Assembly: GCA_028826165.1 (NCBI GenBank)
Contig: JAPDFW010000080.1
Coordinates: forward strand, 186,001 to 250,000
Source: Anaeramoeba ignava BMAN
Lineage: Eukaryota; Protista; Anaeramoebae
Length of the DNA: 64,000 nt
Direction of reading: 5' to 3'
Every line of letters starts with the position of its first letter. The first letter of the stretch is position 1. Position numbers and translations under genes: made by a program. Under the pieces are notes generated by a model. The model made no database searches. It was not told the origin of the DNA and was given only the letters and a program-made list of their open reading frames with translations. This document shows positions 44,043-54,500 of the stretch, in pieces.

Positions 44043-47000
44043 TTATTTTAAAATAAGTGGATTAAAATATGGAAGATCTTCAAAACGAAAAATTGAATAC
44101 CAATCAACACGATATTTCAATTTAAAAAATTGCAATAAATTGTTTTGTTTTCCCAAATCAAAAGGATTTAAAAAAATGCCATCTTTCCAAAAGAATTGGT
44201 ATCTTTTCAAATTGATTCTTTCATTTGTTGTGATATTATGCAAAATGTTAAAAATTTGATAATATAAAATATTAATTTCCCAAGAAAAATAGAACAAAGT
44301 TTGCAAACAAACCGACAATAACCAAGGATAATAATGATATATTGAACTAATAAAAGATGGTATTGATGAAAAAGTTAATTTGGGAATTTCTGGATTTGAA
44401 CTGGCAAAAAGATAACTAAAAAATATAAAAATCAATTGAGTTATTGGCATTGCAATTTCATAAATAATGAAGATAATGTGATTTTTATCTCCAACAACAT
44501 TAAGTGTCCATGGACAAAAATGATCAAATTTCGCCACACATCGATTCGATTTTGCATCGTGTTTCGATCGAAGTGGCTTTAAAGATTGACATGTTGCACA
44601 AAAATTCCCATCGCTTATCGAAACTTTTGGTTTTGTTTCTGGTTTTTTTTTCATTCTTTTTTCGTTTTTTTCAATTTCTTCTGTGATTTTTTTTTCAATG
44701 TTTAATGGTTTTTGTTGTATAAATCCCGGATCTTTTAAAATTAAAATTGAAAACATCCACATCATGATTACATTTGGAAAAATAAATAAGATTGTTGATT
44801 TCGGATAAATTTTGATTGTAGGTAATTAATAAGAATGCAAAATGAAAAATAAAAAAAAATATTATTTTTCAAATACATGAAAAGTCAAGTAAAATTTTTT
44901 ATCCGATTTTAAAAAATTTAATTTTATAAATGAATTTTAATTTTATAAATGAATTTTAATTTTATAAATGAATTTTAATTTTAATTTTATAAATGAATAT
45001 TAATTTTAATTTTAATATTAATTTTAATTTTAATTTTATAAATGAATTTTAATATTAATTTTAATTTTAATTTTATAAATGAATTTTAATATTAATTTTA
45101 ATTTTATAAATGAATTTTAATAAAGGATATTTGGCAGAACTTGAAAGAAATATGTTAGATAATCAATCAAATACATTGCAGTAACAGTTCCAAAAACAAT
45201 AGGTGATTGTCCTTTGATTTTTGATGGATATTTTTTCCCAATCTTCAAGAAAAGATAAATTATCAAAGGAATTGAGAAAAGTGAAAGTGCAAATGGAAAA
45301 TTGGAAAAAATTAAATTCATAATTAAAAATGTAAATAAAGGGAAAAAACCAAATAAAATTTTTAAATGAGATCTAATAAATGGATTTTGTAATATTTGTA
45401 ATTCTTTTTTGACACTTTCTAAAAATTCAGAAATATAAAACATTCTTTTCTCTCTTGCAATTTGGATTGGTGTTTTTTGTGATTTATCCTCAATATTAAT
45501 TTTTGCTCCATGTTGAACAAGAATTTTTACTGCTTCAAGATTTCCTGAAATTACAGCATAATGAAGTGGTGTTCTACCGAAAGAATCTATTGTATTTGGT
45601 GAACTACCTAAAGATATTAAATATCTGATAATTTCTACACTTCCAGAACCACATGCATGATGAAGTGCTTTTGATTTTAATTTTGATTTTAATTTATATT
45701 TTGATTTTGATTTTTTATTTTAATTTATATTTTGATTTTGATTTTGATTTTGATTTTGATTTTGATTTTAATTTTGATTTTGATTTTGATTTTAATTTTG
45801 ATTTTGATTTTAATTTTGATTTTGATTTTAATTTTAATTTTAATTTTGATTTTGATTTTAATTTTGATTTTGATTTTAATTTTGATTTTGATTTTAATTT
45901 TAATTTTGATTTTAATTTTGATTTTGATTTTGATTTTGATTTTAATTTTGATTTTGATTTTAATTTTGATTTTGATTTTAATTTTGATTTTAATTTTGAT
46001 TTTGATTTTGATTTTAATTTTGATTTTGATTTTGATTTTAAATTTTTATTTTAATTTTGATTTTGATTTTGATTTTGAATTTGATTTATATTTTGATTTT
46101 GATTTTGATTTTGATTTTGATTTTAATTTTGATTTTCATTTTGATTTTGATTTTGATTTTCATTTTGAATTTTGATTTTAATTTTGATTTTAATTTTGAT
46201 TTTGATTTATATTTTGATTTTGATTTTGATTTTGATTTTGATTTTGATTTTTGGGTTTTAATTTTGATTTTGATTTTGATTTTAATTTTAATTTTAATTT
46301 TAATTTTGATTTTGATTTTGATTTTGATTTTGATTTTGATTTTGATTTTAATTTTGATTTTGATTTTGATTTTAAATTTTTATTTTAATTTTGATTTTGA
46401 ATTTGATTTTAAATTTTAATTTTGATTTTGATTTTGATTTTGATTTTGATTTTGATTTTGATTTTGATTTTGATTTTAATTTTGATTTTAATTTTGATTT
46501 TGATTTTGATTTTTGGGTTTTAATTTTGATTTTGATTTTGATTTTGATTTTAATTTTAATTTTAATTTTGATTTTGATTTTTGGGTTTTACTTGTTCTTC
46601 CACTATCATCTAAAAGATCATAAGGAACTCCTCGTTCAATTAAGTAATGACACATCAATAAACGTTTATGTCTTCCTGAATGATGAATAGGTGATAATCC
46701 TATTGAATCTTTCTATTAAAAAATTAAATGGAAAAATTAAATTGAAAAATTAAATTGAAAAATTAAATGGAAAATTACTTGATAAAGATTTGCATGGTTA
46801 TTAACTAATACTTGGGAAAACATAATTGCTTGAGAAACAACTGCCCAAATTAATGGTGATTGTTTTCTTGGTCCACCTGGAGTATTTATATTTGCTCCTT
46901 TTGAAATTAAAATTTTTGCAATATGAAAACTATCTTTTGCAGCACACCAATGAAGAGCTGTTGCATCTAAAAGAAAAATTAAATTAAAAACGTTTTCAAT

Positions 47001-47321
47001 TTCTTTTCCATTTTTCCTTCTTTTTTGATATTTAATAAAATTTAGTAAAATTTAATAAAATTTACTTCTTGAATCTAAAGTATTAACATCAAAACCACTT
47101 TCAATTATTTCTTTAACTAATTTAAAATTTCCATGTTTTGTTGCTTCACTTAAAACATGAAGTTTTTCCATTTGATAATATCGATTTTGATTTATATTTT
47201 GATTTATATTTATATTTTCATTTTGATTTGTATTTATATTTTCATTTTGATTTGTATTTTCATTTTGATTTAAATTTATATTTTCATTTAAATTTATATT
47301 TTGATTTGTATTTTCATTCAT
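44043..47321 (-). CDS. Akr1/ZDHHC17-type ankyrin-repeat palmitoyltransferase (~626 aa); exons 47321-47066, 46966-46779, 46712-46592, 45667-45131, 44821-44043
   Basis: Ankyrin repeats (TALHWCA, SPLIWA, TPLHYA), TM helices, DPG, CATCQ..KPLRSKH, DHFC (Akr1-like DHHC variant) and TTNE. Total length is divisible by 3 when the AT-AC intron is used. Confidence 0.88.
44822..45130 (-). other. AT-AC intron with U12-type 5' splice site (309 bp)
   Basis: Donor CCAA|ATATCCTTTA and acceptor TAATTAC|CTACA. It is the only junction found that restores the frame and keeps the TM helix before DPG. Confidence 0.75.
45670..46585. repeat. (ATTTTG/ATTTTA)n microsatellite in DHHC intron 3
   Basis: Directly visible. 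Confidence 0.93.
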
Positions 47322-47382
47322 TTTTGGATTTGGAGAAGAAAATGAAAAAGAAAAAAATAATTTTCCATTTTTTTTGTTTTTT

Positions 47383-50300
47383 TCAATTTTTCTTTTGGAT
47401 TTCATTTAAAAATTTCAAAATATCTCCATTTTTACAATCAAAATTCATAAATTTTTCAACTATTGATTTTTGTTTTTCTTGTTGATAAAAATTTTCTTCA
47501 GGATTTAAAGGAAGAATTTCACCATTAGAATGAATTATTTTTGCAATTTCAATACTTCTTTGAATTAATCTATCAGGAAATCCTGCCATTTTTGCAATAT
47601 ATGTACCATAACTAGTTAAAGAACGACCTGGTTTTGTTCTAAAAAAAAAATCAAATAATCAACAAAAAAATATTTAATCCCAAAAAAAAAATTCAAATTC
47701 TTACCGATAAACAAACACAATATTTTCTGGTATTTTGCTTTTTTCAATCTCTGATTTTTCATTCCTCATTTGAAAATTTGAATCTTGGATGATTACTTCC
47801 ATACAAAAAAATGAAATTCCTTTTTCAGGTAATAATTTCATTTCAAAAAGTTCCATAAAATGAGTTGTAATGATTGATCTTGGGCATAATTTTTCTCTTC
47901 GAGTTAAATGATTGATCACAGAGGCAAGAAGAGCAATTCCTTCATTTGTATTTGTTCCTTTTCCAAATTCATCAATCAAAACAAGAGATTTTGAAGTTGA
48001 ATTAGCGAGCATTTGAGAAATTTGAGACAAATCAAGCATAAAAGAACTTTGATCAACAGATACGGATTCGTTACTGTTAATTCTGGTGAAAAATCTATCT
48101 ACTAATCCAATTTTTGCTGATTCTGCTGGAACAAAAGATCCAATATGCGCTAAGAAAATAATTAACCCAACTTGCTTGAGATATGTTGAATTATGACTTA
48201 CAAATCCGTTTGCAATGTATGAATGATCTTCATTTTTCATTGAGAGATCATAAACATTTATTTCTTTATCCAATTTCTTTATCATTTTAACTTGATCCAA
48301 AAATAGCTCAGGTTTTACCAAAAAAATATTTCGTTTTTCAAGGGTTGAAATCAAATTCGTAAATTTCCTCCAATTTCCAGAACAAAACTCAATTTGGCTA
48401 CATTTGTTGGGAAGATATTTCCTTTTTAAAATAATTCCTAAATTGAGAAATATGAGTTGAATTTGGTTTGATAATTTTAAGGAATTAATTTCTATTGAAA
48501 TGCGATCATTTTCAGTTGTAAATAGCAATTTCCTATTGATTTCTTCAATAAAAAACCCTTTTAGAAATGAAATAATAAGATGAGAAGGAGATTGGAGAAT
48601 AAAAGAAGGGATCATCCTCCTTTTTAATTTCCTTTTTTTCCGTTCCTTTTTTCCGTTTGCAAATAATTTCCTCATTTCTTCGTTCATTTCAAGGAAATTT
48701 TGAGTTGTTCTATTTTCCATTTCACAATAATATAAATGATGATCTTTCCAAAATTTCATTTTGATTTGATTTTCAGGAACCAATTTTGTGAAAAGAGCTG
48801 AAAATCTTGATAAGCATTCCTTTTTTTTGGTATTGAAAACTATTTTCTGATCCAACATAATTTGGCAGTTATTTGAGAGAAGAATTCCAAACAATTCTGC
48901 AAGATCTGTTGTTATTTTGAAAGAGGAATTTTCATTTTGTTTTGATTTAATCTGAATTCGATTATTCTTTCCCCAAATTTGAGAGTTATTCATTAAAACT
49001 ATCCAATCTCCTTTTCTAATGTCTGAAAACTTCTTCCAATGAAATAAAAATTTTGAGTAACAAAGAATTTTATGATCTTGCGTTCCTTGAATTTGGAATC
49101 CCTTTTTCGAAAATATTTTAATCGTGCTAGAGACATTTCTCTGGAAAAAAAAAAGAGGTTCATTTTGCCCAGTATAAGATTGAATTTGAATTTGAATTTG
49201 AATAGGAGAAAATTGATCCATTTTTGCTTGTTGAGGCTTGAGTTCCGATAATTCCAAAATTCCAAATTGTGAAAAAAGAAGAGTATCTCCAACTAAGCAT
49301 TTTCCAGAACTGTTTGGACCAGTGATTAATTGTATTAAACCTTGATCTCCAGAGATGGATGTGTCATTGGGAATAAATGAATCAGGAACACATAATTCTT
49401 GAAGAGGATGTCTTCCCTTTTGGATGTTTATCACAGGTTCTTGAGTTAATTGAGGTCTGGAAAAATTATTTTCGTGAGAAACAATAGAAAGTGAAATTAA
49501 ACAATCAAGTTCAGTTGAAATATCTGTAATCTCAATCAATATTTTGGAATTTAACAGAAGAAAGCTTTCCAAACTCCGAACAATAGAGGTTTCTAAATCA
49601 ATTATTTCTCCATAAATATCTCCAATGACTCGATCTAATTCTCTTGTTCGTGAACTTTTAAAGTAGCTGTTTTCTTCAGTGCTAAACTGAAATTCAAAAT
49701 GAGGAATTTGCAAATAATCAATAGTAGAGCTCTCTTTTGTGGGAGAAACACTTGTGAGAGTTTCTCCCTGTTTTGATACTGTTTGGAGGATTGTGGAAGA
49801 ATATGTCTGATAGTTCTCCTCTTGATTCGAAGAAATTGATGATTTTTCAGCGAAACTTGTTTTCATTTCTGAATCATTTGGATGACTTACTTGATCAGAA
49901 ACAAAACAAGATCTTGGAATTGCAACAAGATATCCAAGTTGAGGGAAATATACAATATGCAATTCCTGTATATTAAGTTGAGGAGGGATTGTAGCAATTT
50001 CTTGTGAACCAATCTCAGTGAGTAAATCTCCTAAACTTTCATAAATATCCTTTGCACGATCCAACTTTTCATTGATTCCTTTGCGAACAGCAACACGATC
50101 ATTCTTTTTAGATTCCACAAAATCAAGTGTGGAAGTGAGTTCTCGGAAGATTTGATCAGTTTTCTGATAAGGAAAGTTCGAAAGTTTTTGGAAAATTTTA
50201 AGATTTTGTGCTTTTTGTGATTTTTTCGTTGCTTTTCTTTTTTTACTTCTTCTTGATTCATTCGATTTCTTCTCTTCTTCATCTTCTTCAAAATTGGAAA

Positions 50301-51384
50301 AGGATTCAGAAGTGAAAGAAGGGGATTGACTTGATTGAGAAGAGAGATCCGAGTCCTCCATATTTAATCCAAAATGATGGAAAGATATCTGAAGAATTTG
50401 ACGAAAATGAAAAAGAGTTCGATAGAAGGCAACCCAATCTTTGGTTGTGTTTTGAGACAACCTCATTTTCTTTATCATTTCTCGAAGATCTTTGATATGT
50501 TTTATGGAAGGAACAAGTTTGTTAATAAGCTCCATTCCATCAAAGGATAAGAAATAATCAATAGAATTAAGACGATCTTGAAGAATTTGAAGATCTATTA
50601 TTGGATTCATCATCCAAGATTTGAGCAATCTTTTACTAGAAACTGAAGAAGTGCGATTCAGCAAACTGAAAAGTGATAAACCCTCCTTTGCATGACCAAT
50701 TCCTTGAAAACTTGGATGATTTTCTGTATTGAATATGGAAAGAGCCTTATAAGATGTCTGATCCATAAGCAGAATTCCATCTAAAGTGATCATTTGAAGA
50801 TCCAAAATGGGAAGATCTTCTTCATCATCATCAAGTTCAAAATCAATTCTATTTCTAATTAGAAAGAGGAGAAGTGCCCCGATAGCTTGAATCATTAACT
50901 TATTAGAAAAGTCAAGAAGAGAAGAAAGATATATTTTTTTCTTCAAATCAGATTTGGGTGCTGAAGCTAAATTAAGGTTTAAAATTCTTTTTTTTGCTGA
51001 TTGATAATCGAAATCTGCTTGTTTCATAAAAATAATTTTGGAATTTGTTTCATCAATTTCCTCTTCGTCTGCTCCTAAAAGTAAAGAAGGATTATTTTCA
51101 TTATTATTTTGATTATTTTCATTATTTTCATTATTTTCTTTATTTTCTTTTTTTGATTTCCATTTTCCTCGAAGAATTTGAATAAAATTTTCTTCTGCTC
51201 TTGAATTTGTGATGATTTTCCATGGATTTGTTTTGAAAAGAAGAAGTTTGAGAACTGAAAAATCTTCTTTGTTTTCTTGAGTTTCTAGACTCTTGATTAT
51301 TGATGTTCTTGAATTATAAAATGCTATTCCTAATTTTTTGGTTTGATAAATTGTAACAAAATAAATTTGATCAATTTCTTCCAT
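47383..51384 (-). CDS. MSH5: MutS homologue MSH5 precursor (~1311 aa including intein; ~941 aa mature); exons 51384-47705, 47638-47383
   Basis: MSH5-typical motifs KEGLSLFSLLNRT, VYFPQLGYL, GRHPLQELCV..FIPND, ITGPNSSGK/STYLKQVGLI.FLAHIGSFVPA, LVLIDEFGKGT, THF and SYG..IA.MAG. Confidence 0.9.
48190..49299 (-). mobile_element. Intein (370 aa) with degenerate LAGLIDADG homing-endonuclease domain inserted in the MSH5 Walker A motif
   Basis: Block A CLVGDT, block B GTQDHKIL, blocks F/G VYDLSM..DHSYIANGFVSHN, followed by +1 Ser. Removing it restores GPNSSGK-STYLKQ. Confidence 0.95.
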
Positions 51385-51562
51385 TTTTTTTTTAAACAAA
51401 AAAAGAAAATAAAAGTGAAAGATCTTGTTTTTGTTTTTTTTTTTGAAGTTTTTTTATAAATTTTGCCTGAAAAAAAAAAAAGATAAACTTGAAGGAAAAG
51501 AAAAAAAAAACAAATTGACATTGACAAATTTTTTTTTTCAATTCCAATCATTTTAATTGTTT

Positions 51563-54500
51563 TCAATAATTATCAGATTCAAAACTATCAAAATCAATTG
51601 ATTTTTCGTTTTCATTATCAGAATCAAAGCTATTAAAATTAATTGAGTCGTCATCACTATCTTTATCTTTATCTTTATCTTTATCTTTATCTTTATCATT
51701 ATCATTATTTTTATTTTTATTTTTATCTTTATCAGATTCATTATCAGATTCATTATTAGATTCATTATTAGATTCATTATTAGATTCATTATTAGATTCA
51801 TTATTAGATTCATTATCATTATCATTATCATTATCAGATTCAGAACTATCGAAATTAATTGATTTTTCTTTTTTATTATCTTTATCATTATCATTATCTT
51901 TATCTTTATCTTTATCTTTATTAGATTCATTATTAGATTCATTATTAGATTCATTATCAGATTCATTATTAGATTCATTATTAGATTCATTATTAGATTC
52001 ATTATTAGATTCATTATTAGATTCATTATTAGATTCATTATTAGATTCATTATTAGATTCATTATTAGATTCATTATTAGATTCATTATTAGATTCATTA
52101 TTAGATTCATTATTAGATTCATTATTAGATTCATTATCAGATTCATTATTAGATTCATTATTAGATTCAGATTCAGATTCATTATTAGATTCATTATCAT
52201 TATCATTATCATTATCATTATCATTATCATTATCATTATCAGATTCAGAACTATCGAAATTAATTGATTTTTCTTTTTTATTATCTTTATCATTATCATT
52301 ATCTTTATCTTTATCTTTATCTTTATCATTATCAGATTCATTATTAGATTCATTATTAGATTCATTATTAGATTCATTATTAGATTCATTATTAGATTCA
52401 TTATTAGATTCATTATTAGATTCATTACTAGATTCATTACTAGATTCATTATTAGATTCATTATTAGATTCAGAACTATCGAAATTAATTGATTTTTCTT
52501 TTTTATTATCTTTATCTTTATCTTTATCTTTATCTTTATCTTTATCATTATCATTATCTTTATCTTTATCTTTATCATTATCATTATCATTATCAGATTC
52601 AGAACTATCAAAATTAATTGATTTTTCTTTTTTATTATCTTTATCTTTATCTTTATCTTTATCTTTATCTTTATCTTTATCTTTATCTTTATCTTTATCT
52701 TTATTAGATTCATTATTAGATTCATTATCAGATTCATTATTAGATTCATTATTAGATTCATTATTAGATTCATTATTAGATTCATTATCATTATCATTAT
52801 CATTATCATTATCAGATTCAGAACTATCAAAATTAATTGATTTTTCTTTTTTTTTATCTTTATCTTTATCTTTATCTTTATCTTTATCTTTATCTTTATC
52901 ATTATCTTTATCTTTATCTTTATCTTTATCATTATCATTATCATTATCTTTATCTTTATCTTTATTTTTATCTTTATCTTTATCATTATCTTTATCTTTA
53001 TCAGATTCAGAACTATCAAAATTGATTGATTTTTCTTTTTTTTTATCTTTATCTTTATCTTTATCATTATCTTTATCTTTATCTTTATTTTTATCTTTAT
53101 CTTTATCTTTATCTTTATTTTTATCAGATTCAGATTCATTATCATTATCAGATTCAGAACTATCAAAATTAATTGATTTTTCTTTTTTATTATCTTTATC
53201 TTTATCTTTATCTTTATCTTTATCTTTATCTTTATCTTTATCTTTATCTTTATCTTTATCTTTATCTTTATCTTTATCTTTATCATTATCTTTATCATTA
53301 TTATTATCTTTATCTTTATCTTTATCATTATCTTTATCATTATCATTATCTTTATCTTTATCTTTATCATTATCATTATCATTATCATTATCAGATTCAG
53401 ATTCATTATCAGATTCAGAACTATCAAAATTAATTGATTTTTCTTTTTTATTATCTTTATCTTTATCTTTATCTTTATCTTTATCTTTATCTTTATCTTT
53501 ATCATTATCATTATCATTATCATTACCATTATCATTATCTTTATCTTTATCTTTATCTTTATCTTTATCTTTATCATTATCATTATCAGATTCAGAACTA
53601 TCAAAATTAATTGATTTTTCATCATCTTTATTTTTTTTGTTATCTTTCTTTTCATTATCTTTTAAACTAGAAAGATCAACTTCAATTTTAGTAAAATTTT
53701 CGATCGATTTCCGAAAAATTTCATTTGGTTTAAAAATTGTAACAGTTTCAACATATTGATTAATATCAAAAACTTCAAAAATCAAATTTAATCCAATAAA
53801 AATATAAAATTTTGTTTGTAAAAATTGTTCATTCCAATCTGTTGAGTGAACAATCGGTTTTTCAGGATTTCCAAGAATTTCACAAATTTCATTAAACTAA
53901 AAAGAAAGAAATGAATAAATAAATAAATGAAAGAAATGGTTTGCGATGAATACCTTCATTAAAGAATTGATTTTTAAGGAATTAATTTTAATTTCCCACT
54001 TATTTTGATGATATCTTTTCAAATAAAATGAATTTTTGTTTGATTAAACTACTTCTTGTTTGAAAAATAAATAAAATTAATTCAAAACTTACAAATTAAA
54101 GTTACTGTGAGTCAAAAAATTGGAATGAATAACAAATTTTTTAATCAAATGAGTCTCTTGATCAAATAATATGTCTAATCCTTTTTGGAAATAATTATAA
54201 AAATAATCATGAGAACTCATTTGAAATTCTTTTTCTTCTAAATTATCAAAAATAGAACCTGTAAAAAAAAAAAGAAGAAGAATAAGAATAAGAATAAGAA
54301 GAAGAATGAAAGAAATCAAACTTACTTTGTTTAAAAAGGATTTGATCAGGTGAACCTAAAGATAAAAGTGTGTCTTGAACAGAATCGCCAAAATTTAATT
54401 TAAATTGATTTAAAATGGAAATGGATTTTAAAGGCTAAAAAAGGAAAATAAAAAAGAGAATGAAAAGGGAAAAGAATTTTGAATTAATTTTTCTTGAGTT

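What the first reader, a model, noticed from the sequence alone, without database searches (positions are those of the whole stretch)
48190..49299. Intein inside the Walker A motif of the meiotic crossover gene MSH5
Seen: a 370-aa in-frame insert starting CLVGDT, with TxxH (TQDH) and ending VYDLSM..YIANGFVSHN, sits exactly between K and S of GPNSSGK/S. Established: these are canonical class-1 intein splicing blocks, P-loops are favoured intein sites, and nuclear inteins are rare in eukaryotes (mostly fungal VMA1/PRP8; Anaeramoeba is known to be unusually intein-rich). Inference: MutS-gamma ATPase activity depends on protein splicing, so the intein could gate meiosis post-translationally. Intein homing needs heterozygous alleles, so its presence in a meiosis gene also hints at sex.
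Basis: partly seen in the sequence, partly recalled or inferred. Interest (0 to 1): 0.8.

Follow-up and report, generated by a model that had tools for sequence, protein, structure and literature searches.

The report
Published intein in Anaeramoeba MSH5
A real self-splicing protein insert (intein) interrupts the ATP-binding loop of the MSH5 gene of the amoeba Anaeramoeba ignava, but NCBI already labels it as such, a 2023 survey of this genome covers the Msh-family inteins, and its mobility enzyme looks dead, so it is an ordinary member of a described set.

Summary
Window 48190-49299 (minus strand) encodes a 370-residue insert with no stop codon, lying between K and S of GPNSSGK|STYLKQ in a MutS-family gene. 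It passes Pfam's Intein_splicing cut-off and keeps every class-1 splicing residue. It folds confidently (pLDDT 89.8) as a Hint domain plus a LAGLIDADG domain, like the VMA inteins and PI-PfuI.

The host is MSH5. It has a MutS5_N domain and no MutS_I or MutS_II, and it is the reciprocal best match to a fungal MSH5.

It is not new. The exact protein is KAJ5072732.1, [quoted passage not shown]. Gallot-Lavallee et al. 2023 (PMC10710043) treat the Msh2-6 inteins and introns of this genome.

MSH2 and an MSH4-like paralogue carry related inteins at the same site, and the three form one clade. Two intein-free paralogues have an intron 4 nt upstream of the site. Many bacterial MutS proteins carry an intein at the identical site.

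The endonuclease is degenerate: the motif-1 Asp is Asn and both motif glycines are lost. The argument from homing to sex is therefore weak, and nothing supports gating of meiosis. No RNA run was available.

This scan had already reported the MSH2 intein on other DNA (s1-698174).

The parts
49300..51384 (-). N-extein of MSH5 (695 aa, ATG at 51384). It holds MutS5_N, MutS_III and MutS_IV and ends in GPNSSGK of Walker A.
48190..49299 (-). Intein, 370 aa. The Hint splicing domain is split by a LAGLIDADG-fold domain. Splicing residues are C1, T73/H76, D351, H369-N370 and +1 Ser.
48535..48903 (-). Degenerate LAGLIDADG endonuclease core (about intein residues 133-255). Motif 1 is LAELFGILLSNN (acid replaced by Asn143, Gly replaced by Asn144). 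Motif 2 is FLKGFFIEEI (acid kept as Glu253, Gly replaced by Ile254).
   Evidence: Pfam LAGLIDADG_3 E=0.15, below its cut-off
47705..48189 (-). C-extein, first part. It starts with STYLKQVG, which completes Walker A, and holds Walker B (LIDEFGKGT) and TTHF.
47639..47704 (-). 66-nt GT-AG spliceosomal intron (phase 2) near the 3' end of the gene.
   Evidence: removing it gives exactly the deposited 1311-aa protein P0004
47383..47638 (-). Last exon (84 aa plus stop), the C-terminal helix-turn-helix part of MutS domain V.

Best explanation
This is the already annotated intein of Anaeramoeba ignava MSH5. It is a class-1 intein that contains a LAGLIDADG domain, and it is inserted between Lys and Ser of the Walker A loop. 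The gene is translated as a 1311-residue precursor. The intein then most likely excises itself by the standard four steps: an N-S acyl shift at Cys1, trans-esterification to the +1 Ser, cyclisation of Asn370, and an O-N shift. This would restore GPNSSGKSTYLK and a working MutS ATPase. The splicing chemistry is inferred from conserved residues and was not shown here. The endonuclease domain keeps its fold but has lost key catalytic and structural motif residues. The element is therefore most likely a fixed, immobile passenger that splices constitutively. It belongs to one intein lineage that also occupies the same site in MSH2 and in an MSH4-like paralogue of this genome. Its arrival by spread between paralogues is inferred, and was published in 2023.
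For: Intein_splicing scores above Pfam's cut-off. An exhaustive HMMER search gave 1230 relatives, 173 of them at E<=1e-10. Of 140 full-length intein matches among the listed top hits, 85 follow a Lys and 125 have Ser or Thr at +1. Ten representative bacterial MutS proteins carry an intein at the identical GPNMxGK|C...HN|ST site. All splicing-block residues match columns that are invariant or nearly invariant across 74 relatives. The AlphaFold model has pLDDT 89.8 and pTM 0.90. Its best PDB matches are the TliVMA and PhoVMA inteins, PI-PfuI, PI-SceI and I-DmoI. Host identity rests on a fungal MSH5 best hit at E 3.5e-45, a reciprocal best match in the window's own genome, and precomputed MutS5_N on the protein. 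The exact protein is named 'intein-containing muts protein precursor [Anaeramoeba ignava]', KAJ5072732.1. PMC10710043 covers the Msh2-6 inteins, the homologous inteins in Msh paralogues and the introns at empty sites. Paralogous inteins are seen, and the three form a clade with SH-aLRT 99.
Against: Splicing of this particular intein has not been shown. The 2023 paper confirmed splicing for only three other Anaeramoeba inteins. No RNA run was on record, so transcription of the insert was not checked. I could not read the paper's Dataset S1, so the intein's entry in that table is inferred from the NCBI product name and the legend of Fig. 5A. The clade of the three Anaeramoeba inteins could be inflated by their shared A+T-driven amino-acid composition, which the tree tool flagged. 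Glu253 in motif 2 leaves open a residual nicking activity.
Confidence: 0.9

Rival explanations
1. The intein is a conditional switch. Its splicing is held back until a signal such as redox state, temperature or DNA damage arrives, and this gates MutS-gamma (MSH4-MSH5) activity and so meiotic crossing-over.
For: ATP binding is impossible before splicing because Walker A is split. The MSH4-like partner carries a related intein at the same site. Conditional protein splicing is known for some prokaryotic inteins (my own knowledge).
Against: No sequence feature found here points to regulation. MSH2, which is not a meiosis gene, has the same intein lineage at the same site. The genome holds about 100 inteins, mostly in housekeeping replication and repair proteins, which fits selfish passengers. 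Site choice is explained by a preference for P-loops.
Confidence: 0.04
2. The intein is still an active homing element, and its endonuclease cuts empty MSH5 or other MSH alleles. Its persistence would then imply outcrossing sex in Anaeramoeba.
For: The LAGLIDADG fold is retained at high model confidence. Motif 2 keeps an acidic residue, Glu253. Related inteins in three paralogues show past mobility.
Against: The motif-1 catalytic position is Asn, where 60 of 74 relatives have Asp or Glu. The glycines that follow both motifs (70/74 and 59/74 in relatives) are lost. Pfam LAGLIDADG_3 gives E=0.15 here, against 1e-10 to 1e-25 in the bacterial MutS inteins. The three paralogous inteins are only 28-39% identical, so any transfers are old. 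No intein-free allele appeared in the DNA contigs, which is weak evidence.
Confidence: 0.05
3. The insert is removed at the RNA level as an intron, or the gene is a pseudogene whose intein no longer splices.
For: No RNA data could be obtained. The genome is known to hold some pseudogenised inteins.
Against: The boundaries are not GT..AG. The frame is open for 370 codons in very A+T-rich DNA. All splicing residues and all extein ATPase motifs (Walker A, Walker B, TTHF) are intact. The deposited gene model keeps the insert as coding sequence.
Confidence: 0.02

Closest known systems
Anaeramoeba ignava Msh-family inteins (Gallot-Lavallee et al. 2023, PNAS, PMC10710043; NCBI KAJ5072732.1)
   Same: This is the same protein, with an exact sequence match. 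[quoted passage not shown] It states that several A. ignava Msh paralogues have homologous inteins and that introns sit at or near empty sites. I reproduced all of this.
   Different: Nothing substantive differs. I add only a residue-level reading of the degenerate endonuclease motifs and a fold model.
Bacterial MutS Walker-A inteins (for example MutS of Fimbriimonadales/Armatimonadota, cluster of P0021)
   Same: The insertion point is identical: GPNMxGK|C...GFVSHN|STY. The N-terminus CLVGDT is the same in P0021. The architecture is also Hint plus LAGLIDADG.
   Different: Identity is only 22-28%. The bacterial inteins have strong LAGLIDADG_3 matches with GDG and DTDG motifs. In the quick tree they form their own clade, and it is not sister to the Anaeramoeba Msh inteins.
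Archaeal VMA inteins with homing endonuclease (TliVMA and PhoVMA, PDB 7qsu/7qss/7qst), PI-PfuI (1dq3), PI-SceI (1vde)
   Same: They share the two-domain fold, with TM 0.70 to 7qsu and Foldseek E 2.7e-20. They are also class-1 Cys1...HN inteins.
   Different: They sit in different host proteins and sites. Sequence identity is 9-19%. PI-SceI and PI-PfuI are active endonucleases (my own knowledge), whereas this one lacks the motif-1 acid.
Anaeramoeba 'cluster 1' P-loop inteins (Fig. 6B of PMC10710043)
   Same: They are inserted in Walker A loops of unrelated ATPases. Of 140 full-length relatives found here, 47 follow a Walker-A-like [AG]xxxx[GS]K.
   Different: I could not see which network cluster the paper assigns to the MSH5 intein, because the supplement is not held.

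Membership tests
Class-1 intein (Hint/Intein_splicing) | Profile match above the curated threshold | tested here: met
   PF14890 scores 50.9 bits against a cut-off of 35.8. It is also precomputed on P0004.
Class-1 intein (Hint/Intein_splicing) | Nucleophilic Cys or Ser at position 1, a block B TxxH, a block F Asp, a terminal His-Asn, and a +1 Ser, Thr or Cys | tested here: met
   C1, T73-Q-D-H76, D351, H369-N370 and +1 Ser are present. H76, H369 and N370 are invariant in 74 relatives.
Class-1 intein (Hint/Intein_splicing) | In-frame insertion in a conserved host motif whose halves rejoin to the consensus | tested here: met
   GPNSSGK|STYLKQ rejoins to the same motif as intein-free GPNMSGK-STFSRM in paralogue C82 and as bacterial MutS.
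Class-1 intein (Hint/Intein_splicing) | Hint fold | tested here: met
   The model has pLDDT 89.8. Top PDB hits are inteins, including the GyrA mini-intein 1am2 for the splicing domain.
Class-1 intein (Hint/Intein_splicing) | Demonstrated protein splicing | not testable with these tools
   This needs a reporter assay or a junction peptide. The 2023 paper tested three other inteins.
Active LAGLIDADG homing endonuclease | Two LAGLIDADG helices in an alpha-beta-beta-alpha-beta-beta-alpha fold | tested here: met
   Helices 131-141 and 239-249 are followed by beta hairpins. I-DmoI matches at E about 1e-5.
Active LAGLIDADG homing endonuclease | An acidic catalytic residue at the end of each motif, followed by Gly | tested here: not met
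   Motif 1 has Asn143-Asn144, where relatives have D/E in 60/74 and G in 70/74. Motif 2 has Glu253-Ile254, where relatives have D/E in 68/74 and G in 59/74.
Active LAGLIDADG homing endonuclease | Profile match above threshold | tested here: not met
   PF14528 gives E=0.15 and 12.8 bits against a cut-off of 22.5.
MSH5 (MutS-gamma subunit) | MSH5-specific N-terminal domain (Pfam MutS5_N, PF27035) | tested here: met
   It is precomputed on P0004. It is also present on the best outside hit, P0001.
MSH5 (MutS-gamma subunit) | No mismatch-binding domain I, and a MutS III/IV/V core present | tested here: met
   Only MutS_III, MutS_IV and MutS_V were found at E<=1.
MSH5 (MutS-gamma subunit) | Reciprocal best match to a known MSH5 among the genome's MutS paralogues | tested here: met
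   Fungal MSH5 P0001 hits this gene best. This is the only paralogue it matches outside the ATPase domain.
MSH5 (MutS-gamma subunit) | Placement inside the MSH5 clade in a tree with named MSH2-6 references | not tested
   No set of named eukaryotic references was on hand. The 2023 paper assigns Msh2-6 in Anaeramoeba.
Allelic family of MutS Walker-A inteins | Same insertion site as the bacterial MutS inteins | tested here: met
Allelic family of MutS Walker-A inteins | Groups with the bacterial MutS inteins rather than with inteins of other hosts | tested here: inconclusive
   In the quick tree the bacterial MutS inteins form one clade (99) and the three Anaeramoeba inteins form another (99). 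The link between the two is not resolved, and there are warnings for long branches and composition.

The most novel reading that the evidence does not exclude
MSH5 and the MSH4-like paralogue taken to be its MutS-gamma partner, together with MSH2, carry one intein lineage at the same Walker A position. If splicing of these inteins were conditional, one signal could switch crossover and mismatch-repair ATPases on together in an organism whose sexual cycle is unknown and that reportedly lacks DMC1 (PMC12722695).
Probability: 0.03. Interest if true: 0.7.

Novelty: already known. Interest (0 to 1): 0.12.

Why it matters
The finding adds little. It confirms one published entry in the intein catalogue of the most intein-rich eukaryote known. 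The useful points are modest. MSH5, the MSH4-like paralogue and MSH2 all need protein splicing at the same loop. The MSH5 endonuclease is degenerate at the residue level, so the intein cannot be used as evidence for ongoing sex. Bacterial MutS proteins carry an intein at the identical site, but a direct relationship to the Anaeramoeba inteins is unresolved.

Tried and rejected
RNA evidence: the single run search returned only DNA-type or unknown runs kept as contigs. Laying four of them showed the DNA contiguous across the intein. The only joints were repeat artefacts in low-complexity stretches, with at most 24 letters on the shorter side. No contig lacked the intein or the 66-nt intron.

Supplement of PMC10710043: it is not held, so the Dataset S1 row could not be read.

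The word-index search with the N-extein gave only 3 hits, and the same search on the intein region did not recover the genome's own MSH2 and MSH4 proteins. These blanks say nothing. The A. flamelloides MSH5 orthologue was not retrieved. That it lacks this intein rests only on the paper's list of eight shared sites.

The feature-based Atlas search gave generic MutS clusters, with an MSH5 cluster only at rank 6. That is weak evidence and I did not rely on it.

Solved structures by sequence matched only the MutS core of MSH3, MutS, MSH2 and MSH6, which does not decide orthology.

The mature (joined) MSH5 was not built or searched. 

Full report
**Observation.** The window holds a long minus-strand ORF at 47701..51399. 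Within it GPNSSGK is followed directly by CLVGDT. After 370 residues the insert ends ...VYDLSMKNEDHSYIANGFVSHN, followed by STYLKQVG. This maps to exactly 48190-49299, so the coordinates and all quoted motifs are right. The insert scores 50.9 bits on Pfam Intein_splicing (cut-off 35.8). On LAGLIDADG_3 it gives only E=0.15. Its boundaries are AAA|TGC and AAT|TCA, which are not GT..AG. A 370-codon open frame in about 28% G+C DNA is very unlikely by chance.

**Gene model and organism.** An exhaustive HMMER search with the intein returned a 1311-residue protein that is 100% identical over the query, P0004, with the intein at residues 696-1065. P0004 equals exon 1 (ATG at 51384, down to 47705) plus a last exon (47383-47638), after removal of a 66-nt GT-AG intron at 47639-47704. 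The exact-sequence look-up names it KAJ5072732.1 / UniRef100_A0A9Q0RA43, [quoted passage not shown]. The genome is 42.8 Mb in 147 contigs and gives at least 38 six-frame matches to the intein profile. This fits the 103 inteins reported for A. ignava BMAN.

**Host identity.**
- Pfam finds MutS_III, MutS_IV and MutS_V but no MutS_I or MutS_II.
- The best outside hit of the N-extein is a fungal MSH5 carrying MutS5_N (E 3.5e-45, 77% coverage). The next hits are at 1e-8.
- Searched back against the window's own genome, that fungal MSH5 hits this gene best. This is the only one of six MutS paralogues it matches outside the ATPase domain.
- The precomputed Pfam list of P0004 includes PF27035 (MutS5_N).
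- Walker A (once rejoined), Walker B (DEFGKGT) and TTHF are all intact.

MSH5 is therefore well supported, although I did not build a tree with named references.

**The intein itself.** I aligned it with 73 relatives (A2). Every splicing position in the window matches an invariant or near-invariant column: C1, G72-T73, H76, D351, N364-G365, H369, N370 and +1 Ser. AlphaFold2 on this alignment gives pLDDT 89.8 and pTM 0.90. Foldseek places the model with the endonuclease-bearing TliVMA and PhoVMA inteins (E 2.7e-20, TM 0.70), PI-PfuI and PI-SceI. The inner domain matches I-DmoI. The architecture is thus a Hint domain split by a LAGLIDADG fold.

The endonuclease motifs are degenerate. Motif 1 reads LAELFGILLSNN, with Asn143 where 60 of 74 relatives have Asp or Glu, and Asn144 where 70 of 74 have Gly. 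Motif 2 reads FLKGFFIEEI, with Glu253 keeping the acid but Ile254 replacing the Gly found in 59 of 74 relatives. The most likely reading is a splicing-competent intein with an inactive, or at best crippled, endonuclease.

**Relatives.** Among the listed top hits, 140 full-length intein matches were found. Of these, 85 follow a Lys, 47 follow a Walker-A-like motif, and 125 have Ser or Thr at +1. The lineage is therefore common at P-loops. Ten representative bacterial MutS proteins (with MutS_I to V and strong LAGLIDADG_3) carry an intein at exactly GPNMxGK|C...HN|ST. One cluster is named MutS of Fimbriimonadales/Armatimonadota and even shares the CLVGDT start.

Within the A. ignava genome two paralogues carry related inteins at the same site:
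- MSH2 on contig 59: GPNMFGK|CIVGDS...GFVSHN|STF, 447 aa.
- An MSH4-like gene on contig 123: GPNMAGK|CVLGNT...GMISHN|STY.

In a quick maximum-likelihood tree the three Anaeramoeba inteins form a clade (SH-aLRT 99) and the bacterial MutS inteins form another (99). The link between the two clades is unresolved, and the tool warns of long branches and odd composition.

Of the three other MutS paralogues, one (contig 82) has an uninterrupted P-loop. Two (contigs 75 and 89) have a phase-1 intron in the Gly codon of GK, 4 nt upstream of the intein site.

**What is known.** Gallot-Lavallee et al. 2023 (PMC10710043) report several relevant points:
- A. ignava BMAN has 103 inteins.
- Fig. [quoted passage not shown] - Introns lie at or near empty intein sites in paralogues.
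- Inteins home to P-loops of non-homologous proteins.
- Only eight insertion sites are shared with A. flamelloides, and none is in an Msh protein.

Everything I found reproduces these statements. I could not read Dataset S1. An earlier report of this scan reached the same verdict for the MSH2 intein (s1-698174).

It follows from the split Walker A that ATPase activity requires splicing. That splicing gates meiosis has no support. The same intein lineage sits in non-meiotic MSH2, and the genome is full of inteins in housekeeping enzymes. The argument that homing implies heterozygosity and therefore sex is weakened by two things: the degenerate endonuclease, and the low identity (28-39%) among the three paralogous inteins, which points to old events. 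PMC12722695 notes that A. ignava lacks a detectable DMC1 and that its sexual cycle is unknown. The biology remains open, but this intein does not inform it.

**Limits.** No RNA run was available. The laid runs were contigs. They showed only that the DNA is contiguous and that no contig lacks the intein. The mature joined MSH5 was not assembled or searched, and the exteins were handled apart by reference.

**Verdict.** This is a real intein that is correctly described but already annotated and published. Interest is low.

Noticed in passing
L007:5931-6042 (G000:C123, about 132930-133040, minus strand): The related intein in the MSH4-like paralogue has a frame break inside its endonuclease domain. 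One ORF ends ...PKEYLIYFYFQF*, and the rest (IFDIFLLSVLENDEDEG...GMISHN|STYLQQ) continues in another frame. It could be a one-base error in a T run, a real frameshift, or a 47-nt GTATTT...TTTCAG intron, which would restore the frame. If the break is real and uncorrected, the presumed partner of MSH5 would be truncated.
   Followed up: partly
L008 (G000:C75, about 244430-244520, minus) and L010 (G000:C89, about 183960-184810, minus): Two intein-free MutS paralogues (GPNMAG^GKSTLLRQ) have a phase-1 GT-AG intron in the Gly codon of the Walker A GK, 4 nt upstream of the intein site. The intron is 77 nt in C75. In C89 it is about 0.87 kb, made almost wholly of AAATCAAAATC-type satellite. This reproduces the published intron-at-empty-site pattern.
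   Followed up: partly
L009 (G000:C82, minus strand, about 635400): A further MutS paralogue has an uninterrupted P-loop (GPNMSGKSTFSRM), with neither intein nor intron.
   Followed up: no
L006:6016-7356 (MSH2 intein) and window 49180-49205: Microsatellite-coded low-complexity runs sit inside the inteins: NLNQKNSK repeats and FDFNFNFN in the MSH2 intein, and IQIQIQIQ in the MSH5 intein. They lie in regions where the bacterial relatives have gaps. The genome's A+T-rich repeats expand even inside Hint domains.
   Followed up: no
window 51553-53785 (minus) and 45653-46690 (plus): Long ORFs made of DKDK/NESN-type repeats are punctuated by a recurring KKEKSINFDSSESD unit. Next to them lies ILIL/FDFN satellite-like DNA. 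It is unclear whether any of it is coding.
   Followed up: no
window 47052-47405 (minus): A small ORF directly downstream of MSH5 ends in a sequence that looks like an ankyrin repeat (GNFKLVKEIIESGFDVN), after an N/Q-rich repeat. This may be the last exon of a neighbouring gene.
   Followed up: no
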